Shown here in pieces: positions 2,701 to 44,114 of a stretch of DNA of 64,000 nucleotides. The notes under the pieces were generated by a model. It had not been told where the DNA came from and ran no database searches. It saw nothing but the letters and a program-made list of their open reading frames with translations. This stretch comes from Gracilinanus agilis (Eukaryota), in the NCBI RefSeq assembly GCF_016433145.1, contig NC_058132.1, positions 63,597,641-63,661,640 of the forward strand, written 5' to 3'. How positions within the stretch are numbered: position 1 is the stretch's first letter; each line of letters opens with the position of its first letter. Both the position numbers and the translations under genes were made by a program.

Positions 2701-3338
2701 TTCTTCATACCCTGACAGTCGTGCGGGATGGGGCCTGTGGCTGCTGGGCCTCGTTAAGGGGAGGAGGTCAAATCTTGGAGAGCGCCCCTTGCCCCAGTTC
2801 TGTAGCTAGTAAGATCTTTTCACTCTACTTGGCAATGCCGAAGTCCTCTCGCCTTGGACTGCCTAGGGAGTGTTGAGGCCACCAAACTCCCGGTTACTGT
2901 GACTTTCTCCGAGTTCTCTTTCTCTCTCTGGAATACCATAGTTATTAAATTAACATTTGAATCAGTACTCGAAAGGGTTACTCCCCACCCCCCAGAAACT
3001 CCAAACCTGTAATTTAGTGATGGTGAAGGCAAGTTGCTAAGATCCCCCAGAGTTCCTAACCTAAGCTAGGCTTGCAGAGCTAAGTTCTTGTTACAATATT
3101 ATCTTCGTTATAAAGTGGCTTGGTTTTACAAAGGCAATATTGCAAAAAGTCCAACACAAATGACCTTGATATTAGCTCACGCATTCACTAGTTCACTGGG
3201 ATCCCAGAAGATTTGTGTTTATTGGCATTAAGTGGCCTTTTGGGGATTCTTGCTTTACAGTGGGAGAGACCTGCTGTTCCCAAAGATGGCCTAACATGAG
3301 GAAGCCCTGCCAGGTGGGAGCCAGCTGTGATATCGGAG

Positions 3339-14987: not shown

Positions 14988-15317
<330 letters not shown>

Positions 15318-16520: not shown

Positions 16521-16668
16521 NNNNNNNNNNNNNNNNNNNNNNNNNNNNNNNNNNNNNNNNNNNNNNNNNNNNNNNNNNNNNNNNNNNNNNNNNNNNNNNN
16601 NNNNNNNNNNNNNNNNNNNNNNNNNNNNNNNNNNNNNNNNNNNNNNNNNNNNNNNNNNNNNNNNNNNN
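16521..16668. other. Assembly gap (148 N)
   Basis: N run. Confidence 1.
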
Positions 16669-16862
<194 letters not shown>

Positions 16863-23134: not shown

Positions 23135-23973
23135 TCAAGAGAAGCAGTGTTTGATAACCCTGTTTCCTTGAGAGTCCTGGGTAAAGAGCATATCAGGTTG
23201 GGAATTTGACTGAGAGGGGCCCACCACAGATCTGCCCTGGCATTGAACCTGGGGACTGAGGGATGTATGCAGGGGCTTTCTCAAAAGGTTGGCTACATCT
23301 TGGAAAGGGGCTCGAGATGAGTGAGCAATGACCCTCTGGCCCTGAGAATCCTCTGTGAACAACTGGCTCCTCAGGTCTGTATCACACCTCTCACTATTCC
23401 AAGAAAAGGCCTGACTGGAGCAGGATCTTTGTTCTACTAACTCTGTGTCCTCTCCCCTCCAGGACTCCCCGTTTTCTCCTTTCCCTGCCTTGCTTTTTTG
23501 GGAGCCTTGGGGAAGGACAGAGAATTGTTTGTTTTCTTTAGTAAATACTTTCCTTTCTGCCCTCTCTACTAGGCACTCCTTCTCTTGCCCTGGTCTATAA
23601 CGTATCCCCCCACCCCCTATTTCATGGGCTAGCACACAAAGGTCTTCTGAGTTCTGGGTGAAGGCAAAACCCACCTCAGCAGAACCTACAATCTCTGACT
23701 TGGGCAGAGGCAGTTTCTGGTCTTGGCTACTGAGCACAGCTGGTCTTGCCTCTCTGCAACAGTCAGATACCTCCTTGGAAGATGGAGGAGGGCAGATGAG
23801 CTCCTGAGGTTCTTTAGTGACTGAAGCCGCTGTAGTTTCAGGATACTGGGCACAATGATTCCCAGGAGTCAATGGAGGAGGATCCAACCACATCACATCT
23901 CTTTTTTGTTCTTTCCTTCTCTGACTTGCTGTACCAGGAGAAGGCCTTCCCTGCCCACCATCACTTGCCTTTC
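23135..23973 (-). CDS. AUNIP: AUNIP coding exon 3 (Aurora kinase A and ninein interacting protein)
   Basis: Acceptor ttgtttttcag| before 23973, in frame with ORF 23135-23896. Contains AUNIP hallmarks SQLFTEDSQGQRVIAH..RAPFQDV and LFTQDSQGNRVIKH. TGA at 23137-23135. Confidence 0.95.
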
Positions 23974-24765: not shown

Positions 24766-24907
24766 CTGACTTTGAAGTAAAAAATGATGCAATGACAGTC
24801 TGCCTGGTACCCACAGGTTGAGTTCTTCTTTGAGTAAAACCAACAATAGTTTCTCTCTCACCTCCAACTGGAGGCAGCATTCTGGTGATGGGATTGGATA
24901 ATCGAGT
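24766..24907 (-). CDS. AUNIP: AUNIP coding exon 2 (TRLSNPITRML...RQTVIASFFTSKS-G)
   Basis: 142 bp with cttttag| acceptor and G|gtac donor. Open frame aligns with human THLIKPGTKML...FTQRR...IASFFT. Phases join exons 1 and 3 into a 1062-bp CDS (353 aa). Confidence 0.93.
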
Positions 24908-25892
24908 CTAAAAGGGGGGAAAAAAGATCGTCAAACCTAAAGATGTAAAACATCAGCTGTAAAGAAGACAATAGTTAATTCCTTTGTTCTAGTATAGTAA
25001 ATTGGTCCCTCTAGACTCAGTCGATTTTATTCTATGTTCTGGCAACTTACTTCAAGTACAAACCCTGTACTTCTTATATCTGCCTTATAGCCAGTTTTTT
25101 AGGGAGTAGTTTATAATAGTAGTGTATAATAGCCCAGCTGTTTCCTTCCTCTAAAATATTCAGGCTAATTTCAAAACCAGAGTTTTGGGGGAAGATTTCA
25201 AATATAATACCATTAATACTACTAACCACGATCATTAGAACCATATATTTTGAGATGTTTTCCCAATAGAAGTAATGGTCAATAGCCACTCCCTCGATAC
25301 TGCCTGGAATGACAACAAAAGGAAATACTTCTGAACTCTAATAAGCTCCTGGTTCTAACATATAATTACTTAGTCACAAAGTATCTCCGATATCTCTCCA
25401 TCTCCCAAAGTATTTATGTGTTAGATGTATTAGAAAGAATTTCTTTCCCAAAAAGATCTTTAAAAAAAAAAGCCCAAAAGAAAAATAGGCAAACAGTCCT
25501 GCTTTGAAAGTTACATGTTGAACTTATTATATACTTGAAAAGAAAAAGTATATATTAGAGTTGCATGTAAAAATCTTCTTTTTCTGTTCTACTATGTATA
25601 TGAAAAACTTGTTTTAGTTTTGAATTGTTTAAAAATTTTTTAACTCTTACCTTCTGTCTTAGTATTGGTTCCAAGGCAGAAGAGTGGTAAGGGATAGGCA
25701 ATGGGGATTAAATTACTTCCCCGGGAAGTATCTGAAACCAAAATTGAACCCAGGACTTTCATCTCTGGGCCACCTAGCTGCCCCTTAAAATTAAGAAGAG
25801 AAGGGAGGGGAGGGGAGAAGAGGGAGGAGAGGGGAGAAAAAAAAAGAAAGAAGAAAAAAAGAATCTAAGTTAACCACCCATTTCTATTACAA

Positions 25893-26265
25893 CGAATTCA
25901 TAGTCGTACTATAATTCTAGCTTGAGGCCTACAATTAATTCTACCACTGATATGTACATGATGACTACTAGCTAGCCTAGCTAACCTAGCCTTACCCCCA
26001 TCCATCAATCTCCTAGGAGAACTAACAGTCATTATCTCATCGTTCTTATGATCCAACTTTTCCATTCTCCTCCTAGGAATTAACACAGTTATCACCGCCC
26101 TATACTCCTTATACATGCTTATTACCTCCCAACGAGGGAAATTTACCCATCATCTCATCCCCATCTACCCATCCCTCACACGAGAACATATACTAATGAT
26201 CCTTCACATCTTACCACTAATTATACTATCACTTAACCCAATATATATCCTAGGAATAACATACT
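25893..26265 (+). pseudogene. MT-ND4: NUMT MT-ND4 3' fragment
   Basis: In mitochondrial code reads RIHSRTMILA(W)GLQ...[22 protein letters not shown]...TREH with no frameshift. The conserved ARGLQ arginine codon appears as TGA (CGA>TGA) at 25923. Confidence 0.95.
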
Positions 26266-26334
26266 GCAAATATAGTTTAACAAAAACATTAGATTGTGAA
26301 TCTAAATATAGAAGTTTAAACCTTCTTATATGCC
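26266..26334 (+). tRNA. MT-TH: NUMT tRNA-His (mitochondrial pseudo-tRNA)
   Basis: Cloverleaf with anticodon stem TTAGA/TCTAA, GTG at 26296-26298, and one A:A mismatch in the acceptor stem. Confidence 0.92.
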
Positions 26335-26391
26335 GAGAAAGTATCAAGAACTGCTAACTCCTGAGACCATAACTAAAATTATGGCTTTCTC
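26335..26391 (+). tRNA. MT-TS2: NUMT tRNA-Ser(AGY), D-armless
   Basis: GAGAAAG...CTTTCTC acceptor stem, AAGAACTGCTAACTC anticodon arm, GCT at 26353-26355. Confidence 0.92.
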
Positions 26392-26462
26392 ACTTTTAAA
26401 GGATAGCAGTAATCCATTGGTCTTAGGAACCAAAAACTTTGGTGCAACTCCAAATAAAAGTA
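26392..26462 (+). tRNA. MT-TL2: NUMT tRNA-Leu(CUN)
   Basis: ACTTTTA...TAAAAGT acceptor stem, TTGGTCTTAGGAACCAA anticodon arm (TAG), and a canonical GGTGCAACTCC T arm. Confidence 0.93.
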
Positions 26463-28269
26463 ATTAATCCTATTCTCAATTCAACAGCTCTACTATCAAT
26501 TATACTACTAACACTACCTATCCTACATAACCTCATATTTCCTAATAAGACTAAACACTTTCCTTCCTATTGCAAAAACATAATTATATTAGCCTTTTTC
26601 GCCAGCCTACCTCCACTATTTACTTTTATCTACAATGGCCAAGAATCAATCATCACTAACTGACACTGATTCTCAATCCACTCATTCTCCATCTCAATAA
26701 GTTTTAAACTTGACTTCTTTTCCATCATCTTTATCCCCATTGCCCTATTTGTAACCTGATCCATCCTTGAATTCTCCCTCTGATATATACACGCTGACCC
26801 TAATATCTCCCGATTTTTTAAATACCTAACTACCTTCCTTATAACAATGATCATCTTAGTTTCAGCCAACAACCTATTCCAACTTTTCATTGGATGAGAA
26901 GGCGTAGGAATCATATCCTTTATACTCATCGGTTGATGGTACGGACGAACAGACGCTAATACCGCAGCCCTCCAGGCCATCCTATATAACCGCATTGGAG
27001 ACATTGGGTTTATACTATCCATAGCCTGACTAATACTAAATAACAACTCATGAGATCTTCAGCACATCTTCTCAACCAACATAGATACTATTGCCCTCCT
27101 TGGCCTAATTATTGCAGCCACCGGAAAATCTGCCCAATTTGGGCTTCACCCTTGACTCCCTTCCGCCATAGAAGGACCAACTCCCGTATCAGCCTTACTC
27201 CACTCCAGCACTATAGTAGTAGCCGGAATCTTCCTCCTAATCCGATTTCATCCTATAATCGAAAACAATCAAATTATTCTCACAACCGCTCTATGCTTAG
27301 GGGCCATAACAACTCTGTTCACAGCCATCTGCGCAATTACACAAAACGATATCAAAAAAATCGTAGCCTTTTCAACATCTAGTCAATTAGGTCTAATAAT
27401 AGTTACTGTAGGCCTCAACCAGCCTCACCTAGCATTCTTACATATCTGCACCCATGCTTTCTTCAAAGCAATGCTATTCCTATGCTCTGGATCTATCATC
27501 CACAGTCTTAATGACGAACAAGACATTCGAAAAATAGGAGGACTATTTAACTCAATACCTATCACATCCTCTGCCTTAATAACAGGCAGCCTTGCACTCA
27601 CAGGAACCCCTTTTCTAGCAGGCTACTACTCAAAAGACTCAATCATCGAAGCCCTAAATATATCATACACAAACTCGTGAGCCCTCATTATAACACTAAT
27701 TGCCACTTCCTTAACCGCTATCTACAGCCTACGTATTTATCTTCTATGCCCTCTTAGGCTACCCCCGATTTACACCAATAACCCCAATCAATGAAAACAA
27801 CCCTAACCTAATTAACCCTATTATACGACTCGCTCTAGGAAGCATTTTTGCAGGCTTCATCTTAACAGCTAACATTCCCCCAACATCATCCATCTCCATA
27901 ACCATGCCAACCATAATCAAACTATCTGCCCTAATAGTCACCCTTCTAGGCCTTTTAATCGGCATAGAACTAAACTCTCTTAGCAATAAACTCATAAACA
28001 CAACTAACCATACTGTCTTCTTCTCTAATTTACTAGGCTACTTCACTCACATTATTCATCGAATGACTCCCCTAATAAACCTATTTATAGGTCAACGAAT
28101 TGCTACCATACTAATTGATCTTAATTGATATGAGAAAGCAGGACCTAAAGGTCAAGCTTATACTCACTCCTTAGCATCTTCAAAACTTTCCTCAGCTCAA
28201 AAAGGACTAATAAAAACATACTTCCTATCTTTTCTTGTCTCAATAACACTCATTCTAGCACTTATATAA
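26463..28269 (+). pseudogene. MT-ND5: NUMT MT-ND5, full length with one +1 frameshift
   Basis: ATT start at 26463 (or ATA at 26454), TAA at 28267-28269. In mitochondrial code the frame is open except for an extra T at 27736-27738 (cgtatttatc versus RIIFY). Motifs [36 protein letters not shown] and HAFFKA are present. Confidence 0.96.
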
Positions 28270-28770
28270 TCTCCGCCCACGAACAACTTCTAATACAACA
28301 TAAATAGTAATAAATAAAATCCACCCTAACAAAGCTAAGGCTCAACCACCACATCAATACAATAACGAAACACCATTAAAATCTTGACCAATACAATGGG
28401 TCCCAGCAAAATCAAACAACTCAATAGCTATATTAATATGAACTTCTCCAGACAAATAATACCATACTGCTTCCATCAATAAAACAAACAATAACATACT
28501 TATAGCCACAACATTTCCAATCCATGTCTCCGGAAACTCTTCTGTAGCCATAGCAGCAGTGTAACCAAAAACTACCAATATGCCACCTAAGTAGACTAAA
28601 AAAACAACTAACCCTAAAAATACATCTTCTAAACATACCACCACCGCACAGCCTAAACCCCCACTAGCAACCAAACTTAACCCCCCATATACCGGAGAAG
28701 GCTTAGAAGCAAAAGCTACAAACCCTACGATCAATAACAAAGAAATAAAAAAAGTAATTATCATTTTTAT
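28270..28770 (-). pseudogene. MT-ND6: NUMT MT-ND6, intact frame in mitochondrial code
   Basis: 501 bp from ATA start to AGA stop. Reads MKM..FVAFASKPSPVYGGLSL...[24 protein letters not shown] with no frameshift. Confidence 0.95.
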
Positions 28771-28823
28771 TATTTTAGCATGGACTTTAACCATAACCTA
28801 TGGCATGAAAAACCATTGTTGTA
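28771..28823 (-). tRNA. MT-TE: NUMT tRNA-Glu, 5'-truncated at the NUMT junction
   Basis: Follows the ND6 start. TTC anticodon at 28809-28807. Mitochondrial similarity ends at cattgttgta. Confidence 0.85.
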
Positions 28824-30105
28824 GTATTACCTACTAGCTATGTAATCATCTATATCTGTGATGGAGAAACATCAAAAAAAAATAGCTGTAAGCCCAACCC
28901 CATCCCCTGAATGCAGGGGGGTGAGGGGTGGAATGCTGCATGCAGTGAGGCAGGGTATGGCACTCGGTCTCTAAAAGGTTCATCATCACTATAGTATCCT
29001 TAACTCTTTTTGTGTTTTACATAGATTTCTAAATAGCCCTTTCCTTTTCCTTCTTTTTCTCAATGAGTCATCCCTTAATAAAAAGAGGACAAGGGGGAAT
29101 GGAACATTGGGGCAGCGAGGTGGCTCAGTGGATACAGCCAGACGTGGAAACAGGAGGTCCTAGGTTCAAATCTGGCCTCAGATACTTCCTAGCTGTGTGA
29201 CCCTGGTCAAGTCACTTAATTCCCATTGCCTATCCCTTACCACTGTTCTGCCTTGCAACTAATAGATTCTAAAACCAAAGAATATGAGTTTTAAAATAAA
29301 AACAAACAAAAAAGTAACTGGCACTTCCAAAAAAGCCTGAAATTATATAAAGTGCACTACATGCATAGTTCCTCATCTCTACGAAGACAGAGACATACAT
29401 CTTCATATATCTCCCTAGTGGTTAAGCTTAGTCATAATATTTTACAACATTCAGTTTCAGTTGCTTTATTGTTTTTATTTACATTGTTGTAGGCAGCTAG
29501 CATTTTGCCTGAAGTGAGGGAGACATACCCAAGTTCAAATCTTTTCTCAGAAACTAGCTGTGTAACCCTGGTTAAGTCACTTAACTGCTATTTGCCTCAG
29601 TTTTCTCAACTGTAAAATGGGGATAATAATAATACCTACCTCCCAGGATTGTTGTAAGAAGCAAATGAGATAATGTTTGCAAAACTGGTGCTACAGAAAT
29701 GCTTATTTCCTTCCCTTCTCCTATCTCTTCCATCCCCACAGAGCATTGTTTTTCTTATTCTGCTTACTTCATTCTTTGTATTTTTCCCAAGCTGCTTCTA
29801 TATTCGTCAGATTCATCACTTCTGACAGTATAGTAATATTCTATTACATTAAATGTCACAACTTACTTAACCATTTCCCCAAATGATGGGCATATATACT
29901 TTGTCTATTTCTTTGCCACTACAAAAAGTACTATTTTATACATATACTCACGTATATGTATGCTAAGTAAACACAACTTTTAAAAATATCTCCCAAAGCA
30001 GCATGGCATAGTAAAAAATTGAGGATACAATGAGTCAGAAGACCTAAACTAAAATCTTAGTCCTTATATTTACTTGCCTACACTTTCTATTAACACCACT
30101 CTAAA

Positions 30106-30140
30106 GTGTGTGTGTATGTGTGTGTGTGTGTGTGTGTGCG
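30106..30140. repeat. (TG)n microsatellite
   Basis: Directly visible. Confidence 0.9.
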
Positions 30141-30501
30141 CGTGTGCACTCGAATGCGATCAACAAATGGAACTCTAAAAGTTGTAAACCTCAGTTCTTT
30201 CATTAATAAAATGGGGACGTTAAAGCTTGCTACTAACCTACCTCTGGGTCATTTTAAGAGGTCTGGCTATCTGCTACAAATGTACTACCTCCCCGTTCAA
30301 GAATTTCAGAATCTCCTTATCTAACCATAATCTATTAGCTTTTTACTATCTCTTCCTCCCCTTACATAACTCTATTCATCTGTGCTGTGCCTCCAACTCC
30401 TTGACCCTTCAATTCTCTCCCAGACCATTTCTGCCATACTAGTCACTCTCTCCTATTCTCTCCATCCTGATTCCTTGGCAAACCAATTCAACTCTCTACA
30501 C

Positions 30502-30692
30502 CAGTGGTTCCTAAATTTTTTTGGCCTACCACCCCCTTTCCAGAAAAAATATTACCTAGCCCCCTGGAAATTAATTTTTTTTATTTTAATAGCAATTAAC
30601 AGGAAAGATAAATGCACCTATAGCCATCACCGCCTCTCTGAATCACTGCAGCACCCACCAGGGGGCGGTGGCGCCCAGTTTGGGAATCACTG
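30502..30692 (+). mobile_element. hAT/Charlie-type MITE (191 bp)
   Basis: TIRs CAGTGGTTCCTAAA and TTTGGGAATCACTG. Perfect 8-bp TSD CTCTACAC at 30494-30501 and 30693-30700. Confidence 0.93.
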
Positions 30693-30873
30693 CTCTACAC
30701 TGTCCTACCTTCTTGAAGCCTTAGTCCCTTATATCACCAATTGTGCCCAGTCAAGCCTCAGCCTTGGGTCACTCCTACCATTGGTCACCTTCACTCCATA
30801 TACATATTACTGAACAAAGAGAAAGAAAATCAGGTAACTATTCTGGCTATAAATTTATATAAATTAACCTCAA

Positions 30874-31066
30874 GGGGGCAGCTGGGTAGCTCAGTGGATT
30901 GAGAGTCAGGCCTAGAGAAGGAAGGTCCTAGTTTCAAATTTGGCCTCAGACATTTCCCAGCTGTGTGACCCTGGGCAAATCACTTGACCCCCATTGCCCA
31001 CTCTTACCACTTTTCCACCCAGGAGCCAATACATAGAAGTTAAGGGTTAAAAAAAAATTTTTTTTA
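30874..31066 (+). mobile_element. SINE1_Mdo-like SINE
   Basis: gggggcagctgggtagctcagtggattgagag head, gaagttaagggtt-A tail, and ataaattaa-like flanking duplication. Confidence 0.92.
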
Positions 31067-31069
31067 AAT

Positions 31070-33230
31070 AAATTAATCTCAAGTAGGCCCTCACTATTGC
31101 TAGGCAATTCTACTGTTATCTCCCTTATCAATTCACTATCCCACTCTCCAAATCTTTTCATCCCTCCTTGAATCTCTCATGGCTCCCCTTCCCTCATTCT
31201 CTCAGCTGAGAACCTTGCCTCATATTTTAGAGAAAAAATTGAGGCTATTTGTTCTGAATTTCCTCTTTTCCTCATCTCACTCAGATGCCTCCTGCCACTT
31301 TCTACTCTTTTACTCCTGTTTCACATGAAGTGGCCTTACTCCTTAATCAAATCAAGGATAAGTCCTCTATTTGTTGTTCATGCAATTCTAATCTGTCCAT
31401 CTCTTCCAACAGATTGTCTCTTCTGTCATCCCATTTCTTTCACTTATTTTCAAACTCTCTCTATTGGCTAATTTCCTTCTGCTTAAACAAACCCTCATGT
31501 CTTTTCCATCCTCCCTTGATGCTTCCATCCCTGGGAAACATCATTTTTATATCTCTTCTGCCCTTTGTAGTTAAACTCCTTGAAAAGGCTACAATAAATC
31601 ACTCTGCATTCTCTTCTCTCTCTTAAATACTTACAATCTAGATTCCAACTTTATCGACACTGCTCTCTCCAAAATAACTAAAGATCTCTCTCTTTTTTTT
31701 TTTAACCCTTACCTTCCGTCTTGGAGTTGATACTGTGTATTGGCTCCAAGGCAGAAGAGTGGTAAGGGTAGGCAATGGGGGTTAAGTGACTTGCCCAGGG
31801 TCACTTGACTTCTCCTCAGCCTAGACACTGTTGATCTCTACTCTCGAATATTCCTTGTTACTCTCTTCTCTCTAGGTTTTCAGGACACCACTCTCTCCTA
31901 CCTATCTGACTATTTCTTGTCTGTCTCCTTTACTGGATCCTCCTCCAGATCAGTATTTCTAACTAGATATCCTTCAGGGTTTTGTCCAAGGTGGATTTCA
32001 TGTCTCTGCCTATGCTATTTCACTTGTTGGACTCATCTGCTCCCATAGATCAAATTACCGTCTCTATGCTAATAATTCCCAAATCTATCTTTCCATCCCC
32101 AGTCTTTCTGCTGACCTCCAATCTCACATTTCCAACTGCCTTTTAGATATCTCAAATTGGATGGCCAATAGACAAACTCATTATGTCCAAAACAAAACTT
32201 ATCATTCCTTCTAAAATCTCCTCTCATTCCTATCTTCCCTATTACCACAGAAAACACTGTTGTACCCGAATTTTAATACCTAACCCAGGTTTGTGGCCAG
32301 AGGAAGAATCACACTGACAATGCAATATGCAAGAAGAGGCTCATTCTTTACTAGCAATAATAGCTAGGGTTGCTAGGCAGAGAGGCTTGGCTGAACCAAC
32401 CCCTTGAAATTCTTAGTCAATGGTTTATATAGAAATGTTTGGGGAAGGGAGTTGGAACATGTCATCAAGGCAGGGACAGGGAATCAGGAAGCACCTGAGG
32501 GCCATCCATCAAAGGGGAAAAGAGGGGTGTTAGGGTCAGGGGTCAGAAAGCCTCTGGTAAGATATTTATGTCTTGGGAACTTTCTTGCCTGGAAATTGAT
32601 TTTAGGCCTGTCAGGGGAAGAAAAGAAAGACTGTACTGGGAAACTTTTGAGGCTGGGGGGTTTCAGGAGACTGACCAAGGTGAGGGCCAGGAAGCAGCTT
32701 ACTGAACAGGTTAGAAATAGTTCAGTAGTCTGTCAGGCTGATTTTTAAACCCAACAACACCATCCTCCAAGGCCCTCAGGCTCACAACCTAAAAGTCATC
32801 CTGGATTCCTCACTATCTTTCACCCCTCTATCCAAGCTGTTGCCAAGGGCCTGTCAATTTCACCTTTGCACCATCTCTCAAATATATGGCCCCCTTGTGA
32901 CATTGCCACCACTCTAGTGCAGACCTTCAACACCTCACAAGGCCTTGATTATTATAATAACATGCTGGTGAGTTTACCTCAAGTCTCTCCCCACTCCAAT
33001 CCATCTTCCATTGAGCAATTAAAGTTAATTTTCCTACAGGTTCAATAATGTCAAACCATCCTACCACCACCTCCAGGAACAAATATCAAATCATCTGTTT
33101 GACAGTGAAAGCCCCTGCCTCCTCCTACCTTTCTGGTTTTCTTAATCCTCCAGAGCAAAGACATATTTTGTGCCTCTTTTTGTATCCCCACCCCTTAGAA
33201 CATAGTAGATGCAAAATGTTTTTTGAATGA
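31070..33230 (+). mobile_element. LINE-2 3' fragment, interrupted by a partial SINE (about 31695-31805) and an LTR
   Basis: Pyrimidine-rich L2-like text (ctaggtttt-caggacaccactctctcc) ending in an L2 tail (catagtagatgcaaaatgttttttgaatga). Confidence 0.8.
32258..32756. mobile_element. Solo LTR (ERV1-like, 499 bp) inserted in L2
   Basis: TGTTG...CAACA termini and a perfect 4-bp TSD ACAC (32254-32257 and 32757-32760). L2 sequence continues across the insertion. Confidence 0.85.
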
Positions 33231-33458
33231 TTGGAATACAGCTTAAAGAACAAATTTAAGTTTTTCATGCCCATGTTTAGACAGCTCTTGAATAGGCATA
33301 TTTGTTTTCTTGAAAGGTCAATGGGATGGGATGGGATGGGAGTGACTTTAATTATTTTAATTAACCTAATTATTTTGAAGGGGAGATTGATCTACACCTG
33401 TGACTCTGCGAGGAACTTCCTAATGTGGAAAGTCACTATTAAAGAAGAACAATATAGG

Positions 33459-33712
33459 TTTTTGTTTGTTTGTTTGTTTGTTTGTTTTTGAGATTGGGTT
33501 TCCATATCTCACTGGGGATAGAAATGTAGTGGCCACTCATAGACCTGATTGATCCCACTACAAAACTGATAAGCATAGCAATGACTTGCTTCATCTTTTA
33601 TATGAACTGGTTTGCCCCTCCATAGGCAATAGCCCCTTAACATAAGCACTCCATCAGCTTTAGCCCTAATATAATTTAGGACTCTTGAATTCAAGAGATA
33701 CACTAGCCTTGG
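33459..33712 (-). pseudogene. Decayed 7SL (SRP) RNA retrocopy with an A-rich (CAAA)n tail
   Basis: Blocks align by eye to the 7SL reverse complement (gagattgggttt; gtagtggccactcatag; gatcccactac; ggtttgcccctcccataggcaa; ggactcttgaattcaagagat). (TTTG)n at 33459-33489 is the tail. Confidence 0.75.
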
Positions 33713-34560
33713 TTGCACTTCCCCATCCTAGGATAGTTTTAGAAGGTTGCCAGGGGTATTAAAAGGTTAAGTGAGTAACTTAAACTCAGTAATTTATGAC
33801 TCTGAGGCCAGCTCACAATTTATTATGCAACACAGACTCTCACTAAATAATAATAAACAAATAATAATTTATTTGATAATAACAAAAAAATAAACAAAAA
33901 ATAATAAAAATAGTAACCCTATCTTAGACTTCTATAGAACCTATTTTCCAAAGAAATTAAAATCCTTCACTTAAATTCTGCATCAAAATTCCTTTGCATT
34001 TTATGGTTATAAACTCAATTATTTCGGCTCTTTCATCCTCCTATCAGAAATTATGAGAATCAGAGTTATTGCTTCATTTTCAGATAGAAAAACAAAAATG
34101 TAGAGTAGAGAAATTGCAGGTACATGAGTTGTAGAGTCAAGACTAGTGTCCTCGTCAGTTAAAAGTTCTACTCAAGGGGCAACTACATGACTCAGGGGAT
34201 GGAGAGCCAGGCCCAGAGATGGAGGTCCTCAGTTCAATTCTAGTCTCAGACACTTCATAGCTATTGCCCAGCCTAAGCTCTTCTGCCTTAGAACCAATAT
34301 ACAGTATTGATTCTAAGATAGAAGGAAACGGTTTTAAAAAAAAAAGTTCTACCCAAAAGGTCCAGGAATCTAAACATTCAGCTAAGATTTCTAGCCTTCT
34401 AGTTCCATTCTCTGGCAGATATGTGCATGTCTATCAACATGCATACATACACACATACATAAATATTTTAGAAATACTTTTGTTTTGTGTCTCCTATCAA
34501 GCCTGCTTAAATTGACATCTTTGGCTGTTTTCCTTCTTTTTAAAAAAATTTTCCCAATAT

Positions 34561-35254
34561 TGTAGAATGTAAAAGGGAATTCTTTGTTCTCTTTGCCTAG
34601 TTAGAGCTAACACTTCGGTTAACAATAACTTAAGTACCACTACTTAGTACCTCACTAGATTGTGAAGACAGGATTAACCCTCCTTTGTCCACCTTTTGAT
34701 TGAATCAACAAAGGCTTGAATTAGATGGAAGAACTCACAAACCACTGTGATTGGCCCCTATGAAAAGGGGAAGAGACAAGAACCCACGATAAAAGGCCCA
34801 GAATTTCTGGGTGGGAGAGAAGGAAGTTCACTCCAAGAAGGAAGTCAGCTTCAAGAAGGAGTTGGATTTCAAGAGGGAAGTCAGCTTCAGGAAGATCAGC
34901 TCAAGGAAGACCTCAAGAATCACCTTCAGCTCAAGTCACGGTCTAGGCCTGCCTCTTGGAGGGAACATGAGTGAGTGGATAGCTGGCTTTCCCTGCCTGT
35001 CTTCTGGAATGAATTTAATTCCTTTTGAAGGTCAACAAGTTCTGGCTGAGTCAAGCACCAGAGCAATATTTAGTTAGATAGGCCAATGTCTTCTTTACCT
35101 TTTTTGTATTTCTCTGCTTTCAATCTTTCCACTCTTGCAAATAAAAGCTATTAAAGTCATTTCAACTTTGAGCAATAATACTTTGAATCGGCAACCACCA
35201 CTATTATTTATAATCTTCATATATTTTAGCCAACCATTAATTTTCACCTTTACA
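34561..35254 (+). mobile_element. Solo LTR with an internal 18-bp tandem repeat
   Basis: TGTA...TACA termini, AATAAA near 35139, and 4 copies of gaaggaagtcagcttcaa-like units at 34819-34890. Confidence 0.65.
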
Positions 35255-35580
35255 AGATACTACATGTGTGATATAGAATATGTGTCCAAGACAACTCTAA
35301 GGGACTTAATGACAAATAATGCTTTCCACTTCCAGAGAAAGAATTGTTGGAGTCAGAATGTAGATGAAAGCATATGATTTTTCATTTATTTATTTGAGTA
35401 TATTTAGGGGGGTTTGCTTTTATATGATCATTCACTTACAAAAACGAACACTATGGAAATATGTTTTGCATAAAAATATATTATAACCCAGATCTATTCA
35501 CTTGCTAGCTCTGGGAGGGGAAAGGGAATGGAGGGAGGAAGACAAATTTGATTATGTAACTTCAGAAAACTTACTGTGTG

Positions 35581-36508
35581 TGTGATAATGAGATTAAATC
35601 TACCTTGCCCAGTGTTGGGTAAACTATGGCCCTCAGGCCAGATGCAGCCCCCTGAAATGTTCTAAGGGGCTAGGGAGATATTATTCCTAATCTGATGAAT
35701 ACAATGAGTAGGATACAATACAATGAAACTTCAAAAGAGTTGCCTTAGAAACAGACTGACAGATGAGCACTTTTCCTTAGGCCTCCTTTTTAAAAAGTTT
35801 ACCCATCACTGACCTTCTTGCCCTTTCTCAAATCTAATCACTAAAAATGTAAACAACTCCACTTAACTCACAAGTTAGGAGGTCTGTGACCCACGTGTGC
35901 CAAAATGGGTAACTGAATTGTCAGAATTGACTGACTGCCCCCTACGCAGTCCTAAGAAAAAACGTCTATTGTGATTGGACACGTAAACTAAGAGGAAGGC
36001 ACAGAAGTGAAGAAAGAAATGGCCTGGATAAATTAAGAGCACTTCCAGGGTTCGACCCTTTTCGCTCATCTTATTCATGGCTTGGACCTGGAGGAGCTCT
36101 GGCTGGGACCCTGAGACCTTGTTGAGACTGTTCATAAATCTTTCTCTTAGAACTACAAGTGGTGAGTGAAGAAGGCTGACTGACTACCTTAACTTCCCTG
36201 GAGGTACTAGCCTCTGAGAGGTTCCCTTGATTGGGAGAAGCCCTAGTGGCTAAACCCCTTGCTAATTGACTTTTAGGCTCTCCAAGCAGAGGCCCTGCCA
36301 GAGTAAAGCCCAGACTTGAATATGATTCTAGTTCGTTAAGTTAGATCTCTTACTCTACCCTCTTCTCATCTCTCTACTTCCACCCTTCTCCTATATTTTG
36401 TAAATAAATTACTAAAATCATTTTAGGAATTGGTATTTATTCAGTTCCTTGGTGACCACACCTTAAATATTAATATATCCAACCAAAACCCCCTTTTTAC
36501 CCCTTACA
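35581..36508. mobile_element. Solo LTR interrupting an old L1-like 3' end and itself interrupted by a MITE
   Basis: TG...CA termini, possible TGTG duplication, CCAAT boxes and an aataaa-like signal. The flanks rejoin as gaaaacttac-tgtg-gaaatttg. Confidence 0.6.
35610..35811 (+). mobile_element. hAT MITE of a second family (202 bp) inserted in an LTR
   Basis: TIRs CAGTGTTGGGTAAACT and AGTTTACCCATCACTG. Degenerate TSD ACCTTGCC/ACCTTCTT. Confidence 0.85.
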
Positions 36509-38522
36509 TGTGGAAATTTGTTAATATATGTAATTGGTAAAAATGAAATAAAAAAATAAAAACATCCAAAAAACTAGAAAATGAGTAATACCCTGTGTTC
36601 AATAAACAAAGAATATAATATACTTGGAGAACTCCCTGTTTTTACAAGAACAGCTGAGAAACTATTAAGTAATTCGGAAGAATTAAACCAGCATCTTATA
36701 CCATGTATCACAGATAAACTAAAACACAGGCATGCCACTTAAATACAAAATAATCTCATAAAAAATTTGTAAGACACTGAGATATGGTCTCTTCTCAAGA
36801 TGGAATATTGAATATATTGTCAGACTCAGTTGACATGTTAATTAGGTTTGCTGATGTCCTTTTTTCCACCTTAAAAAAAAAAGTTCTTTGTTACAAGGAC
36901 TGGCTCACTTGTTAGAAGAGGGGTGAGGAAGTAATGTTAAAAAGATCATTTTTAAAATTTTTTTCAAGAAATTTAGTATTACAGAGAAAAATGGAGAAGA
37001 GCATGGTAGGTATTAGGGTGCTTCAACATATAAATAATCCTGAAGAATGGGAAATGTATAATTGAAAATAACCTTATTTAGGAAACCCCAAATTTACCCT
37101 TGTCCCAAGAGAACCTGACTACAAGAAAACCGCAGACTGACCCTTATCCCAAACTGAAGGAGAAACCATCTAGAACTCACAGAGCACTCAGAATAGGAGA
37201 GGCAGATGCAGTTAAATCTTAAGTACCTTTTTTGTCTTCTTAGTTTCTTATTCTATTTAGGCAGCTCCCAAGATAACCTAGCCTCAGGCTACAACCTTTT
37301 TTCAAGCCTCTGAATAACCAGTCATTTGTCCTTCTTTTCAAATATTACCTAAGGCATAAATATAACTCCAAGTTCTTTAATTCAATGGAAATTCCCATTA
37401 TTGGTTCCCCTACCCCCAGACATTGTTCTCAGAATTCCAGGGCTGGAAGTCTCAGTGTGGTATGTATATAATTGGTGGCAGTAGGGGCACTGTCTCCCTA
37501 TCCCTAATTAAAGACATGTTTCATTAACTACTTTGGTGATTCCGTGTTTTTTCAGGTTGACTAAAAGACGAAGCCTGGTGAAGTGATAAGGGCAAGTGAA
37601 GTGTTCCAATAGCTTCTAATTCTGTCATAGCCAAGAGAGGAAGGCCAGAACATCAGCTGAATACCCTGTGGCAAAAATAAAGGCGTATGAATCTACTGGA
37701 GTTCCACCAGAATGAGTAGGCATAGATAGTGATCTGCACTGCTGGAGGGAACAAAGATCACAGATCCATCTGAGTTTTAATTTTTGCCTACAATCTTAGA
37801 ATCTCGGTTCAAAGGCATTCAAACGGTAAGGGTTAGGCAACTGGGGTTAAATGACTTGCCCAGGGTCCCACAGCTAGTCTGAGACTAGATTTGAGCTCAA
37901 AACCTCCTGACTCTAGACCTGGCTCTCTATCCACTGAGTCACCTAGCTGCTTCGAATCTAACTGCATTTTAATAAATGTGTATAATATAGTCATTGCCCT
38001 CTCCATCATCTCATTAAGATAGGTCTTTCCTAGCCTCTCACTCAGTTCCTGTTCTGGCCCTTCTATTTCTGCATACCCTTTCATAGCAGTTTTTTCTTTT
38101 TATACATAAAACAAAAAACAGGACATTCCATACAATAAGCAAATTGGTAACTGAAGCCACTGAGATTTTAATGTTCACAGTCATATGTGTACCCTCCTTT
38201 TATACATAGGACATAGGCTCAGAACAGCCCCGTCCCTTCACTATATTCCACTATCACTTGGTTCCACTGCCCTCTTAACTCTTTCTCTATCCCCAGTCTC
38301 GGACCCTTAAACTTTCCCTAGACCCTACACCTCCAGTCGTCACTCTTCACTGGATTCCTACAATTATCAGCCCCCCAAAACCCTTCCTCCCCGCTCCACC
38401 GTCTCCCCTTAAGATACATGCCTCATCCCTGTCCCCCACACTCAAAGCATCTCCCGCCCCTTCCCCCAGGGTCCTCTCTGCTCCTCCCCCTCTCCACAGT
38501 CTCCCTGGCCCCCCACCCCTCC

Positions 38523-38860
38523 NNNNNNNNNNNNNNNNNNNNNNNNNNNNNNNNNNNNNNNNNNNNNNNNNNNNNNNNNNNNNNNNNNNNNNNNNNNNNN
38601 NNNNNNNNNNNNNNNNNNNNNNNNNNNNNNNNNNNNNNNNNNNNNNNNNNNNNNNNNNNNNNNNNNNNNNNNNNNNNNNNNNNNNNNNNNNNNNNNNNNN
38701 NNNNNNNNNNNNNNNNNNNNNNNNNNNNNNNNNNNNNNNNNNNNNNNNNNNNNNNNNNNNNNNNNNNNNNNNNNNNNNNNNNNNNNNNNNNNNNNNNNNN
38801 NNNNNNNNNNNNNNNNNNNNNNNNNNNNNNNNNNNNNNNNNNNNNNNNNNNNNNNNNNNN
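38523..38860. other. Assembly gap (338 N)
   Basis: N run. Confidence 1.
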
Positions 38861-39620
38861 CCCCCACCCCTCCCCGCTGCTCCCTCCTCTGGCTCCTCTC
38901 CTCAATCGTCCCCACGATTCCCTCCGCTGCTCCTCCAGCCCCTCCCCCCACAGTCCTCCCCGCGGGATTTCTGCTTCTCCCTCTTGCCAACGATCCACCT
39001 GCACTTTCCGTCTCTTCAACGCCGCGGCATCCAACCACACGCCGCAGGCCTCAGCCTCAGCGGGGCTTCTTCTCCTCATTGTCGCCTAGGGGGCCGGTCG
39101 AGACCTCCGAACCAGTCAGTGGTGTCTCTTGACAGACCTTCCCGCGGAGGCCGTCCCCGTGCGCCGACGGCCGTTTGGATCTCGCGCCGGCGCAGAGGGT
39201 GGAGCTGAGCGCGCGGCGCCCAACGAGAAAAGCGCGCGCAGAGACGGCCATGTCACGTGTACAGCTCCTCCAGAACTTCCTCCAGCCTTAGCCCCGCCTC
39301 CATTGCTCCAGGCCACGCCCCTCAAGGTTCTGCACCCCCCCCCCCTTACGTAGCGATTCTTCCCACCCGCTCCGGATTCCCTTTCTCCCGGTCCAGGCGG
39401 TCCCTTGGGTTAACGAGAGTTAACTAAGCCACGCCCCAGTTGCTGGACCTTCTCGGCCCCAAACCTTGGCCCCACCCCCGCAGCACCCTGAGGGCCTCAG
39501 AGACTGAGACGATGTTAGAATAGAGGTCCCAATTTCCTCTGGACCCCCTCCCTTGAACCCTCTTTGTCTCGAGTCCCCGCCCCCTCTACCGGCGAGGACC
39601 CCTGCCTCCGATGTCAGCCT
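38861..39620 (-). promoter_or_regulatory. AUNIP: CpG island and promoter of AUNIP
   Basis: Dense CpG around the start codon. E-box GTCACGTG at 39252-39259. E2F/CHR-like GGCGCGAGATCCAAA on the minus strand at about 39174-39189. Confidence 0.8.
38999..39079 (-). CDS. AUNIP: AUNIP coding exon 1 (MRRRSPAEAEACGVWLDAAALKRRKVQ)
   Basis: Matches human MRRTGPEEEACGVWLDAAALKRRKVQ. Donor CAG|gtggat. Confidence 0.96.
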
Positions 39621-41227: not shown

Positions 41228-42283
41228 TCAGTCCTCTTTGCATCTGAGCTCCTGCCTCACTCGGTGACTAAGGAAGAGGGCAGTTAGGACACTACAGACC
41301 ACAGTAAGGAGAAAGAGGGCTGAGAAGTTGTGGAGGGCATGGCGGTGAAGCCCTTCGTAGATGGACCGCCGGGCCTCATAGTCCAAGGCCACGGCCTCAA
41401 GCTGGGCTAGTGTGCACAGCACCAGGAAAACATGAAACAGCTGGTGGCCCTGCCCAAACGTGTGGCACTTGCCAGGAAACCACCTCTCAGGGGAGCAGGC
41501 AGAGAAGAAGGCAGCTGCCAGGAGGAAGAATGCCACTTGGCACTTGTGATAGAGCACCGCCGGGTCTTCTTGACCCAGGACCTGGGCCACATAGATGCGG
41601 TGCACTACCGGGCTGATGTCCAAGGCATAGGCCAATCCTGAGGGCATCTCCTGGCAAATGCGGCCCAGCATCCCAGGCAGCTGGCGGTACTTGGTATAGC
41701 AGGAGCCAGCGCAAGACAGCCAGGCGAGGAAGGCGGCGGCAGGCAGGAAGATGGCTGCCACGCGGGCATGCCATGCTGGCTCAATGGCATAGTAGAAATG
41801 GACCAGGGCACTGCCAAACTGGTACACGGCCACACCCACGTAGTCCAAGAAGAAGAAACTGTAATGCCAGAACTCAGACTTAGCCTGCAGGAGATGGGCC
41901 ACAGCACTAAAGAACAGGTAGGTAATAGAGGCAAGGACAATGAGGAAAAGGGGCCGGGCATGGGGGTCACCCACAAAGTCCACACTGCCCGCAAAATATG
42001 CCAGGCGCAGAAGCAGCACCAGGGCAGCCACCAGGTGGGTCCAGACGTTGACAGCTTCATTGTGCTTTTGGAAAAGGCTCAGGAAGTAAAAACGCCAGGT
42101 ACGATGCAGGGGCCGGTAACCTGAGTAGATGTATGGCTTCCAGAAGAGGCGAGGCACCTCAGCTCGGCCCACGGTGCTGTCTGGCAGGGGGGCTGCCAGC
42201 TCCCCCAGGATCCTGGGCATCTGTCCCAGCTGCCGGACACTGGGAAAGAAGCGACTGAGCTTCTGGGCTATGGCTGTGGCCAT
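41228..42283 (-). CDS. PAQR7: PAQR7, membrane progestin receptor alpha (single coding exon, 351 aa)
   Basis: accATGg start at 42283 (MATAIAQKLSRFFPS). PAQR motifs NEAVNVWTH, SAVAH and GHQLFH and a seven-TM hydrophobic pattern. High similarity to recalled human PAQR7. Likely acceptor ttccatag| before 42305. Confidence 0.97.
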   Translation of the reverse strand: MATAIAQKLSRFFPSVRQLGQMPRILGELAAPLPDSTVGRAEVPRLFWKPYIYSGYRPLHRTWRFYFLSLFQKHNEAVNVWTHLVAALVLLLRLAYFAGSVDFVGDPHARPLFLIVLASITYLFFSAVAHLLQAKSEFWHYSFFFLDYVGVAVYQFGSALVHFYYAIEPAWHARVAAIFLPAAAFLAWLSCAGSCYTKYRQLPGMLGRICQEMPSGLAYALDISPVVHRIYVAQVLGQEDPAVLYHKCQVAFFLLAAAFFSACSPERWFPGKCHTFGQGHQLFHVFLVLCTLAQLEAVALDYEARRSIYEGLHRHALHNFSALFLLTVVCSVLTALFLSHRVRQELRCKED

Positions 42284-44114
42284 GGTAGGGGCTGAGGGCA
42301 GAGAGCTATGGAAAATGAACAAGATAGAATAATCATGAAAACAGCCTCTGTCTCTATGCCCTTCAGAGTTTACAAAACACAATAGCCTGGGAAGTGGTCA
42401 AAGTCATCAGTATTCTCGTTTAAAAAGAACAACAACCCAGTTCCTCTATAGGCTCTTCCTCCTCAGTAACTTAGGTCAGGGCAACCTGAACATCTCACTG
42501 AAAAGGCTCTTGAAAAGGACCTCTGCATCTCCAAATACTTCAGCCTGTTCAGTCAAACAGCCAACAGGCATTTGCTAAATACCTACTACTGGCCAGGCTC
42601 TGGGGTTGGTCCTGGGGATACAAAAACAAAAAGAACCTAAATTACATTGCCGGGGGCCATCAAAATTTACGCTGTATGACAAAGTCAAGTGCATCCTGAA
42701 GCCTGCAGAGCAGGCCACAGGGAAGATGGATGCACCCACTCAAACCCTTCTCTTACTAACACACTATTATTGGAACTGTAATGATCAACATCCCTACTCG
42801 GCCCCAGGAAAATACAGAACAGTAAAGGCTGTTATTAGAGCCTTTACAGGCCCCCCACAAACTCCTAGGAAAGCCCCACCTTTACATGCAGTGATACAGA
42901 AATGCCCCTAAAAAAGTCACTCCATAACAAACCAGCAATTAGTGAGTTAATATTAAAGATTTTAAAACCCCAGAAAAACTGCCCTTTAGATTTCTCAATC
43001 CCCATACACAGAAACTTGGAAAATAGCCTTCAAGCTTCCTTGGTCCTTGCCATGGAAAGGGAGGACAAGGGATGAAAAATAGAGCAAGTTACCGGACTGT
43101 TTTCATTAACCCCACAAGTTCAGAGAACATACTAAACTTACCTTTGAAAAATATTGAATAATGAAAGGCTGTATTGAAATATCTTTTGAAATCTGCTAGT
43201 GTAGCGAATCACTGCTTGATTAATTATGTAACTGAATAGAGCAAAAAATAATCATCCCTGACTTGATTGGTCAAAATGTAATTAACTAGTACTAAGCTGT
43301 AATGCATGAACTGCACCTCATGGATGGGCGGAAAATACCATTTCCAGCCCAGTTACTCCATGATGAATATTTCTTGCCAAAGCTTTGCATCTTTTGTTAA
43401 TCAAAATAGAATAATTATGGAATGTCAATCAAATGATTCTGTAATTCAGTAAAAGTTAATGTATGACTTGATCCATTACAAGAAAAAAATGTATATTGAA
43501 TATGAAAAACCATGCCAACATATATGTAATCTCAATTACATAAAAAATAAAGCCAGCCCACGGCTGACCAGAACAGTTTTTGGGATACATGACTGAAATT
43601 CTGACTGTTCTCATTCGTCTCAATCCACCGACGCCGTCATCCTCCAATAGACCCTGTACCAGCAGAGGCACCCCTCCGCATTATATTGACTCAAAGACCA
43701 ATGATCTCCTATTGCCCTCGCTGCCACTCAACCAACTTTTCTTTCCAATTCCATTCCCTTTCATTGGAATATCCTGCCTCCTACTCTCTACCAATCACAA
43801 AAATCACAGATTATCACCAAGCAGTCTGTCAGGACAACAGAGGGTTGGAACGGTGAGATGCCTCTGATCATGGGATATCATTAGACCTCAGAACCTGAAA
43901 TGTCAAAGCTGGGAGGGGCCACAAAACAGAGAATATCTTATTTGGAATGGATCTAGGAACATGCAATGTAGGGGCTGAAAGTAAACTCTGAACAAGGGAA
44001 GTCAGAGACTAGGGGCTTTAGAACACAGAATGGCAGCGATGGAAGGACCTTAGGACACAGAGTGTTGGAAGATAGGATGTAGGAACTAGAAGGGATCTTT
44101 GCAACCATCTAACC

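What the first reader, a model, noticed from the sequence alone, without database searches (positions are those of the whole stretch)
25891..28824. Young, almost intact 2.9-kb NUMT inside intron 1 of a DSB-repair gene
Seen: ND4(3')-H-S-L-ND5-ND6-E(partial) with only one frameshift in ND5 (27736-27738), an intact ND6 frame, and many CpGs retained. There is one clear CGA>TGA change at the conserved ND4 ARGLQ, typical of nuclear CpG decay. Known: NUMTs enter at DSBs via end-joining and preserve the donor mtDNA state. Inference: a recent, possibly polymorphic insertion. If its differences from extant mtDNA are mostly synonymous, it records an ancestral or introgressed mitochondrial lineage. It can also confound ND5/ND6 phylogenetics, heteroplasmy calls and mt-tRNA fragment mapping.
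Basis: partly seen in the sequence, partly recalled or inferred. Interest (0 to 1): 0.7.

Follow-up and report, generated by a model that had tools for sequence, protein, structure and literature searches.

The report
Recent mitochondrial DNA insert in AUNIP intron
A 2.9-kb piece of mitochondrial DNA was pasted fairly recently into the first intron of the DNA-repair gene AUNIP in the agile gracile opossum; it is a well-preserved but ordinary example of a well-known kind of genomic fossil.

Summary
Window 25890-28822 (+) is one block of mitochondrial DNA, in mitochondrial gene order: ND4 3' end, tRNA-His, tRNA-Ser(AGY), tRNA-Leu(CUN), ND5, ND6 (minus strand) and 52 nt of tRNA-Glu.

- **ND5:** 601 codons, broken only by one extra T at 27736-27738.
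- **ND6:** fully open in the mitochondrial code.
- **CpG:** observed/expected is 0.55, against 0.115 in the flanks.
- **Host:** Gracilinanus agilis assembly GCA/GCF_016433145.1.
- **Divergence:** against that assembly's own mitogenome, ND5 is 581/601 and ND6 160/166 amino acids identical. So this is not misplaced mtDNA, and it is not brand new.
- **Location:** intron 1 (14.1 kb) of AUNIP, antisense, 982 bp from exon 2.

The differences sit at variable sites. About half fall on the insert's own branch. Only a few look degenerative: the frameshift, ND4 R>W, ND5 F388Y and T400M. My inferred age is about 0.3-3 Myr, and the donor may have been a sister mitochondrial lineage.

Two things were not testable. 

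The scan has noted two other, rearranged mitochondrial inserts elsewhere in this genome. Verdict: a new member of a known kind, of low interest.

The parts
25890..28822 (+). Whole NUMT: one uninterrupted block in mitochondrial gene order (about 2.93 kb). Its + strand is the mitochondrial L-strand sequence and is antisense to AUNIP.
   Evidence: GC-skew step. Single blastn block against mitochondrial contigs L001-L007, 25891-28822, about 76% identity. Base composition A 0.34, C 0.27, G 0.105, T 0.28.
25890..26265 (+). ND4 3' fragment: the last 125 codons, open in the mitochondrial code.
   Evidence: Translation and alignment to macropod ND4. Contains 4 TGA codons.
25923..25925 (+). TGA codon (Trp in mitochondria, stop in the nucleus) where marsupial ND4 has Arg in ILARGLQ. 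A candidate CpG C>T change after insertion.
   Evidence: The macropod mitogenomes L001 and L002 have CGT here. G. agilis ND4 was not available.
26266..26334 (+). tRNA-His.
   Evidence: Same position as tRNA-His in L001.
26335..26391 (+). tRNA-Ser(AGY): 57 nt, GCU anticodon, no D arm.
   Evidence: Sequence reading, position between tRNA-His and tRNA-Leu, fold.
26392..26462 (+). tRNA-Leu(CUN), anticodon TAG.
   Evidence: ARAGORN, Rfam 58 bits.
26463..28269 (+). ND5: 601 codons + TAA, complete. 581/601 residues are identical to G. agilis mitochondrial ND5.
   Evidence: P0383 is the G. agilis ND5.
27736..27738 (+). The single frameshift in ND5: one extra T in the run ATTTATC.
   Evidence: Frame 0 changes to frame 1 here. 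Length is 1807 nt against 1806 nt in the mitogenome gene.
28270..28770 (-). ND6: 166 codons + AGA stop, intact in the mitochondrial code. 160/166 residues are identical to G. agilis mitochondrial ND6. It is in the sense orientation relative to AUNIP.
28771..28822 (-). tRNA-Glu, 3' 52 nt only. The 5' 17 nt are missing, and this is the right end of the insert.
   Evidence: All outgroup alignments stop at 28822, while L001's tRNA-Glu runs 17 nt further. The Rfam match to 28836 is below threshold, 23.9 bits against 29.
24908..38998 (-). AUNIP intron 1 (14,091 bp), which holds the NUMT. The NUMT makes up 21% of it and ends 982 bp from the exon 2 acceptor. An assembly gap at 38523-38860 lies inside the intron and was left as it is.
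   Evidence: Splice sites read, sizes, gap.
38999..39079 (-). AUNIP exon 1 coding part (27 codons, ATG to CAG|GT), inside a CpG island.
   Evidence: CpG island. Too short for a Pfam match.
24766..24907 (-). AUNIP exon 2 (TTTTAG|ACT ... TCAG|GTAC).
   Evidence: Pfam AIB PF15334, E = 2.7e-19, profile positions 2-54. Splice sites.
23135..23973 (-). AUNIP exon 3 coding part, through the stop codon.
   Evidence: Pfam AIB, E = 1.2e-75. ORF, acceptor site.

Best explanation
This is a lineage-specific nuclear copy of mitochondrial DNA (a NUMT) in the agile gracile opossum, Gracilinanus agilis.

How it arose (inferred): a linear 2.93-kb mtDNA fragment, running from ND4 codon about 335 to the middle of tRNA-Glu, was captured in one piece when a germline chromosome break in intron 1 of AUNIP was rejoined by end-joining. 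This is the established route for NUMTs and was not shown here.

What it does: nothing, as far as the evidence goes.
- In the nuclear code its 17 TGA Trp codons read as stops.
- ND5 carries a +1 frameshift.
- It lies antisense to AUNIP, well inside the intron.

Age (inferred): the donor molecule split from the line leading to today's reference mitogenome about 1-3 Myr ago. The insertion happened at or after that split, perhaps 0.3-3 Myr ago.

Since then the nuclear copy has picked up only a handful of degenerative changes: the extra T, ND4 R>W, ND5 F388Y and T400M, and perhaps ND6 I6T. It still keeps mitochondrial-level CpG content.

Shown: identity, extent, gene content, host gene and intron, and amino-acid divergence from the same assembly's mitogenome. 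Inferred: mechanism, dates and fixation status.
For: - One block colinear with mitochondrial contigs, covering 25891-28822.
- tRNAs found by Rfam and ARAGORN.
- ND6 best match is G. agilis: 92% as scored under table 11, and 160/166 in the mitochondrial code.
- ND5 is 581/601 identical to G. agilis ND5, with a single extra T.
- The window belongs to the G. agilis assembly. An exact 351-aa PAQR7-like protein lies on a 683-Mb contig of GCA_016433145.1, and the mitogenome proteins come from the same assembly.
- NUMT and G. agilis mitochondrial sequences are sisters on the ML tree, with short branches of 0.021 and 0.013.
- CpG observed/expected is 0.55 against 0.115 in the flanks.
- AUNIP exons flank the insert.
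- Didelphid calibration comes from PMC11336674: subfamily splits at 19.5-20.9 Ma.
Against: - No read-level check of the two junctions was possible. The assembly has gaps nearby, so a consensus partly polished with abundant mtDNA reads cannot be excluded.
There is therefore no nucleotide divergence and no dN/dS.
- The dates rest on 25 amino-acid differences and on nuclear mutation rates that I assumed.
- Outgroups for ND5 are distant (Monodelphis and Australian marsupials), so polarisation at hypervariable sites is shaky.
Confidence: 0.88

Rival explanations
1. The NUMT is real, but the donor was not the ancestor of today's reference mitogenome. It came from a sister or introgressed Gracilinanus mitochondrial lineage that had evolved as working mtDNA for some time before transfer. 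The insertion itself is then much younger than the 3.3% amino-acid divergence suggests, and it may still be polymorphic.
For: - About half of the polarisable ND5 differences fall on the NUMT branch (8 NUMT-derived, 8 mitogenome-derived, 4 ambiguous).
- The NUMT-derived changes still sit at variable sites: mean conservation 0.58 against 0.84 for all sites, permutation P = 0.0016.
- All six ND6 differences are at variable sites, P = 0.0002.
- Only about 3-4 changes hit conserved sites.
- G. agilis is reported to be split into geographic mitochondrial lineages (PMC4494643, citing Faria et al. 2013).
Against: - Numbers are small.
- Polarisation with distant outgroups at hypervariable sites can mis-assign mitogenome changes to the NUMT branch.
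- Counting invariant sites alone, 1 hit out of about 8 is only weakly unlikely under neutral decay (about P = 0.1, my calculation).
- No synonymous-site data are available.
Confidence: 0.35
2. Assembly artefact: mitochondrial reads, the animal's own or a contaminant's, were stitched into a nuclear scaffold. Alternatively, a shorter or more decayed NUMT was over-polished with mtDNA reads.
For: - The window has three N gaps, so it is a scaffolded draft.
- Junction reads could not be examined.
- The best-holding run carries only 36% of the sampled words.
Against: - The block differs from the same assembly's mitogenome at 25 or more residues and has a frameshift.
- Both ends break inside genes (ND4, tRNA-Glu) and run straight into nuclear intron sequence of one gene, with no gap at either junction.
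- A double chimera inside one intron is unlikely.
Confidence: 0.05
3. A functional 'coding NUMT': the intact ND6 frame, which runs in the same direction as AUNIP, is kept by selection or expressed from the intron.
For: - ND6 is fully open in the mitochondrial code.
- In the nuclear code it has a 147-codon stop-free stretch in AUNIP's orientation.
- NUMTs with an intact mitochondrial gene are a described class (PMC12129016).
Against: - ND6 is short, and the insert is young enough for an open frame to survive by chance.
- Two in-frame TGA codons truncate it in the nuclear code.
- There is no promoter, splice or RNA evidence.
- ND5 next to it is already frameshifted.
Confidence: 0.02

Closest known systems
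Mammalian NUMTs in general (for example the 45-species survey PMC10764098)
   Same: A colinear mtDNA fragment in a nuclear, non-coding position, non-functional, lineage-specific. About one NUMT in four in that survey is intronic, and polymorphic NUMTs are common.
   Different: At 2.9 kb with only one frameshift it is at the young, well-preserved end of the range. This particular insert and species are not mentioned in the papers held.
Coding NUMTs (cNUMT) and divergent coding NUMTs (dcNUMT), Genome Res 2025, PMC12129016
   Same: [quoted passage not shown] That paper explains many such cases by substitutions that arose in mtDNA before integration, which is the same reading as the rival above.
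   Different: The dcNUMT class requires dS > 0.1 against the host mitogenome, which could not be measured here. At 96-97% amino-acid identity this insert is probably below that.
NUMT bursts in marsupials (Dasyuridae; Monodelphis domestica with about 800-1,100 NUMTs)
   Same: A didelphid host. It shows that mtDNA transfer was still happening recently in opossums.
   Different: This is a single locus. No genome-wide count for G. agilis was made here.
Other mitochondrial inserts noted by this scan in the same genome (s1-179290, s1-173158)
   Same: Same genome, same class of element.
   Different: Those are described as rearranged or circularly permuted and old. This one is a simple, uninterrupted, young block.

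Membership tests
NUMT (nuclear mitochondrial DNA segment) | Sequence homologous to mtDNA and colinear with the mitochondrial gene order | tested here: met
   ND4-H-S-L-ND5-ND6-E as one block. Seen by blastn to seven mitochondrial contigs, by the tRNA tools and by protein matches.
NUMT (nuclear mitochondrial DNA segment) | Embedded in nuclear chromosomal sequence on both sides | tested here: met
   No gap at either junction. AUNIP exons lie on both sides. The window is part of a 683-Mb contig of GCA_016433145.1. This is met at assembly level only.
NUMT (nuclear mitochondrial DNA segment) | Distinct from the organism's working mitogenome | tested here: met
   19/600 ND5 and 6/166 ND6 replacements plus a +1 frameshift against the same assembly's mitochondrial proteins.
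NUMT (nuclear mitochondrial DNA segment) | Individual reads or PCR products span the nuclear-mitochondrial junctions | not testable with these tools
Coding NUMT (cNUMT, PMC12129016) | [quoted passage not shown] | tested here: met
   ND6 has 166 codons + AGA, the same length as the G. agilis protein.
Divergent coding NUMT (dcNUMT, PMC12129016) | Synonymous divergence dS > 0.1 from the host mitogenome | not testable with these tools
No Logan mitochondrial contig of this species is in the protein collection.
AUNIP (host gene) | Protein matches the AIB family (PF15334) over its length, with a three-exon gene next to PAQR7 | tested here: met
   Exon 2 has E = 2.7e-19 and exon 3 has E = 1.2e-75. GT-AG splice sites and reading phases fit. 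A PAQR-family gene lies upstream. Exons were searched one by one; the joined model was not searched.

The most novel reading that the evidence does not exclude
The insert is a nuclear snapshot of a Gracilinanus mitochondrial lineage that is not the direct ancestor of the reference mitogenome: a deep phylogroup, or an introgressed or now-lost lineage. The insertion would be under about 1 Myr old and still polymorphic. That would make it both a presence/absence marker for G. agilis phylogeography and a record of past mitochondrial diversity.
Probability: 0.22. Interest if true: 0.35.

Novelty: new member of a known kind. Interest (0 to 1): 0.18.

Why it matters
The main value is practical. At about 97% amino-acid identity to the real genes, with an open ND6 and a near-open ND5, this copy can be co-amplified or mis-mapped. 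That could distort ND5/ND6 phylogenies, heteroplasmy calls or mitochondrial tRNA fragment mapping in Gracilinanus.

It also gives a datable presence/absence marker for the G. agilis species complex. If the donor was a sister lineage, it offers a glimpse of past mitochondrial diversity.

It shows that mtDNA transfer was still going on recently in didelphids. It does not change what is known about NUMTs, and its position in a break-repair gene appears to be coincidence.

Tried and rejected
1. **Reads across the junctions.** Local scripts split the query around them. One local blastn aligned the whole window file to locus L001 inside the closed sandbox.

2. **G. agilis mitogenome DNA.** The look-up of encoding contigs located the 16,336-bp mitochondrial contig but served no DNA. 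A search with the 174-aa ND5 piece found no Logan contig of this species; the best hit was 90% identical. No count of synonymous differences was therefore possible.

3. **Closer outgroups.** Logan contigs L001-L003 turned out to be macropod (ND6 97.6% to Notamacropus). L004-L007 are another Australian diprotodontian. All are about 76% identical in DNA and no better than Monodelphis.

4. **Fetching full-length ND5.** Alignments A1-A3 (a fish or whale-NUMT scaffold plus fragments) were badly misaligned by MAFFT. The trimmed alignment A4 worked and returned G. agilis ND5.

5. **Both flanks as halves of one SINE copy split by the insert.** The alignment across the rejoined flanks scored 28, against a shuffle maximum of 41, so the idea was dropped.

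6. **Mutation spectrum as a test of nuclear versus mitochondrial origin of the NUMT-branch changes.** There were too few changes.

7. **Joined AUNIP model.** The joined three-exon AUNIP protein was not searched.
Full report
**What is there**

Between about 25890 and 28822 the window switches to a composition typical of the mitochondrial L-strand sequence. G is 10.5%, and GC skew is -0.3 to -0.5 against about 0 in the flanks.

In the vertebrate mitochondrial code the + strand reads as follows:
- the last 125 codons of ND4 (25890-26265);
- three tRNAs: His 26266-26334, Ser(AGY) 26335-26391 and Leu(CUN) 26392-26462;
- a complete ND5 (26463-28269).

The minus strand reads a complete ND6 (28770-28270), followed upstream by the 3' 52 nt of tRNA-Glu (28771-28822).

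Local blastn against seven marsupial mitochondrial contigs fetched from Logan assemblies gives one colinear block, 25891-28822. It is about 76% identical, with the same end points each time. No other mitochondrial-like piece occurs in the 64 kb.

The right end falls inside tRNA-Glu. The macropod gene runs 17 nt further. The Rfam match that extends to 28836 is below threshold.

**State of preservation**

- ND5 is 1807 nt, that is 601 codons + TAA + one extra T in ATTTATC at 27736-27738. With that T skipped there is no stop in the mitochondrial code.
- ND6 is 166 codons + AGA, exactly the length of the G. agilis protein.
- The ND4 fragment is open.
- In the nuclear code the block is untranslatable, with 4 + 11 + 2 in-frame TGA codons.
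- There are 46 CpGs, observed/expected 0.55. The flanking intron has 0.115, and the same region of a macropod mitogenome has 0.46. Methylation-driven CpG decay has therefore hardly begun.
- One candidate for such decay is the TGA at 25923-25925, where macropod ND4 has Arg (CGT) in ILARGLQ. The G. agilis ND4 could not be fetched, so CGA>TGA remains an inference.

**Whose genome and which mitogenome**

- The best ND6 match by far is Gracilinanus agilis, with Thylamys elegans next at 85.5%.
- That protein lies on a 16,336-bp mitochondrial contig of GCF_016433145.1.
- A 351-aa PAQR7-like protein encoded at 41231-42283 (-) is found, residue for residue, on a 683.5-Mb contig of GCA_016433145.1.

The window is therefore from the G. 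agilis assembly, and the insert can be compared with that assembly's own mitogenome proteins.

**Divergence**

Getting the full-length ND5 took an indirect route. I built a profile from a NUMT-derived whale protein as a length scaffold plus stop-free pieces of the window and of a macropod contig. That profile returned G. agilis ND5 (P0383) as its second hit.

- ND5: 581/601 identical. One of the 20 differences is the start codon.
- ND6: 160/166 identical.
- Every difference can be explained by a single base change, mostly transitions.

On an ML amino-acid tree (ND5 + ND6, mtMAM+G) the insert and the G. agilis mitogenome are sisters. Their branches are 0.021 and 0.013, and the path to Monodelphis is 0.35.

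PMC11336674 places the didelphid subfamily splits at 19.5-20.9 Ma. With that calibration the mitogenome branch corresponds to roughly 1.4 Myr and the insert branch to roughly 2.4 Myr at the mitochondrial rate. The two branch lengths, about 10 versus 16 changes, do not differ significantly (my calculation).

**Which lineage changed, and under what regime**

Outgroup polarisation of the ND5 differences gives 8 on the insert branch, 8 on the mitogenome branch and 4 ambiguous. At the amino-acid level, then, the insert is not a frozen fossil.

The differences are strongly concentrated at sites that vary among mammals:

| Set of differences | Comparison | Permutation P |
|---|---|---|
| ND5, all differences | against all ND5 sites | 0.00015 |
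| ND5, insert-branch differences only | mean conservation 0.58 against 0.84 | 0.0016 |
| ND6, all six differences | against all ND6 sites | 0.0002 |

Random nuclear mutations should hit invariant sites about half the time.

Only a few insert-side changes look like loss of constraint:
- the frameshift;
- ND4 R>W;
- ND5 F388Y, where Phe is found in 118 of 118 mammals;
- ND5 T400M, where Thr is found in 112 of 118;
- perhaps ND6 I6T, where Thr is never seen in 86 marsupials.

My reading is that much of the insert-branch change probably arose while the donor was still working mtDNA. In that case the donor was a sister haplotype rather than the direct ancestor of the reference mitogenome, and the time spent in the nucleus is shorter than the total divergence suggests. 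I hold this with moderate confidence.

Two caveats apply. Numbers are small, and the ND5 outgroups are distant, so some polarisations at hypervariable sites may be wrong. Without the mitogenome DNA, the decisive count of synonymous against non-synonymous changes could not be made.

I assumed a nuclear rate of 2-5e-9 per site per year (my own knowledge, not measured here). At that rate, about 4-6 post-insertion events in 2.9 kb suggest at least 0.2-0.6 Myr in the nucleus. The upper bound is the lineage split, about 1-3 Myr.

**Host gene**

On the minus strand the window carries AUNIP.
- Exon 1 coding part: 39079-38999 (ATG to CAG|GT), in a CpG island.
- Exon 2: 24907-24766.
- Exon 3: 23973-23135.
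- Splice sites are GT-AG with matching phases, giving 353 codons.
- Pfam AIB (PF15334) matches exon 2 (E = 2.7e-19) and exon 3 (E = 1.2e-75).

The exons were searched one by one by reference. The joined model was not searched.

AUNIP steers double-strand breaks towards homologous recombination through CtIP (PMC5645412).

The insert fills 21% of the 14.1-kb intron, lies antisense and ends 982 bp from the exon 2 acceptor. On AUNIP's strand it contributes one AATAAA (at 28771) and one ATTAAA. Nothing shows any effect on the gene. The irony of the location appears to be chance.

Gene order around it is an MTFR1L-like gene (+), then AUNIP (-), then a PAQR7-like gene (-). From my memory, this matches the human arrangement.

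**What could not be done**

The misassembly test and the polymorphism question therefore stay open.
Scripts split the query around them. One sandbox blastn used the whole window file.
- Against an artefact: the block differs from the mitogenome at 25 residues and a frameshift; both junctions are gap-free; and both flanks belong to one intron.
- The index search found only three runs. The best holds 36% of the sampled words, which cannot be interpreted without laying reads.

**Comparison with what is known**

NUMTs are a textbook class.
- About a quarter are intronic, and polymorphic ones are common (PMC10764098).
[quoted passage not shown] Apparent signs of selection in many of these are attributed to evolution in mtDNA before integration (PMC12129016).
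- Didelphids and dasyurids are known to have many NUMTs.
- No held paper mentions NUMTs of G. agilis.
- This scan has noted two other mitochondrial inserts elsewhere in this genome, both rearranged and older. I did not test them.

**Verdict**

This is a real, simple, young and well-preserved NUMT, and a new member of a known kind.

It is useful as a caution for mitochondrial work on Gracilinanus and as a possible phylogeographic marker. It is not surprising.

Noticed in passing
window 25885-25890 and 28825-28830: The hexamer TATTAC stands at both junctions: it ends the left flank, and it sits 2 nt into the right flank after 'AG'. It could be a short target duplication or microhomology with a 2-nt filler, or it could be chance. 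The left copy could also be the diverged ND4 codons AAT TAY.
   Followed up: partly
window 41228-42382 (-): A single-exon PAQR-family gene (PAQR7-like; Pfam HlyIII, E = 2e-53) lies just upstream of the AUNIP promoter. The 351-aa product from the ATG at 42283 is found exactly in GCA_016433145.1, which identifies the genome.
   Followed up: yes
window 14994-15317 (+) and 16671-16862 (+); CpG island about 1500-3000: Exons of a mitochondrial fission regulator gene (Pfam Mito_fiss_reg; MTFR1L-like) on the + strand, tail to tail with AUNIP. The CpG island at about 1500-3000 is probably its promoter. An assembly gap (16521-16668) sits between the two exons.
   Followed up: partly
window 28357-28797 (-): ND6 runs in the same direction as AUNIP, so the intron RNA would carry a 147-codon stop-free stretch in the nuclear code. 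There is also one AATAAA at 28771 on that strand. No evidence of use.
   Followed up: no
protein P0249 (Balaenoptera physalus, 359 aa) and P0095 (Monodelphis domestica, 110 aa): Public 'hypothetical proteins' on nuclear contigs are plainly translated NUMTs: ND5-like stretches interrupted by junk, and an ND6 fragment. NUMT-derived gene models pollute protein databases.
   Followed up: no
window 38523-38860: An assembly gap lies inside AUNIP intron 1, about 140 bp downstream of exon 1's donor in the gene's direction. It was left as it is, so the intron length of 14,091 bp includes 338 N.
   Followed up: no
loci L001-L007: The Logan contigs fetched as outgroups are complete or partial mitogenomes of Australian marsupials. 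L001-L003 are macropod, with ND6 97.6% identical to Notamacropus irma. L004-L007 are an unnamed diprotodontian, about 88% to Hypsiprymnodon and Burramys. None is a didelphid.
   Followed up: partly
G. agilis mitochondrial ND5 (P0383), residues 202, 412, 522: The reference mitogenome itself carries rare residues at well-conserved sites: V202, M412 and S522, each seen in 2 of 118 mammals. The insert keeps the common residue at all three, so here the nuclear copy preserves the older state.
   Followed up: partly
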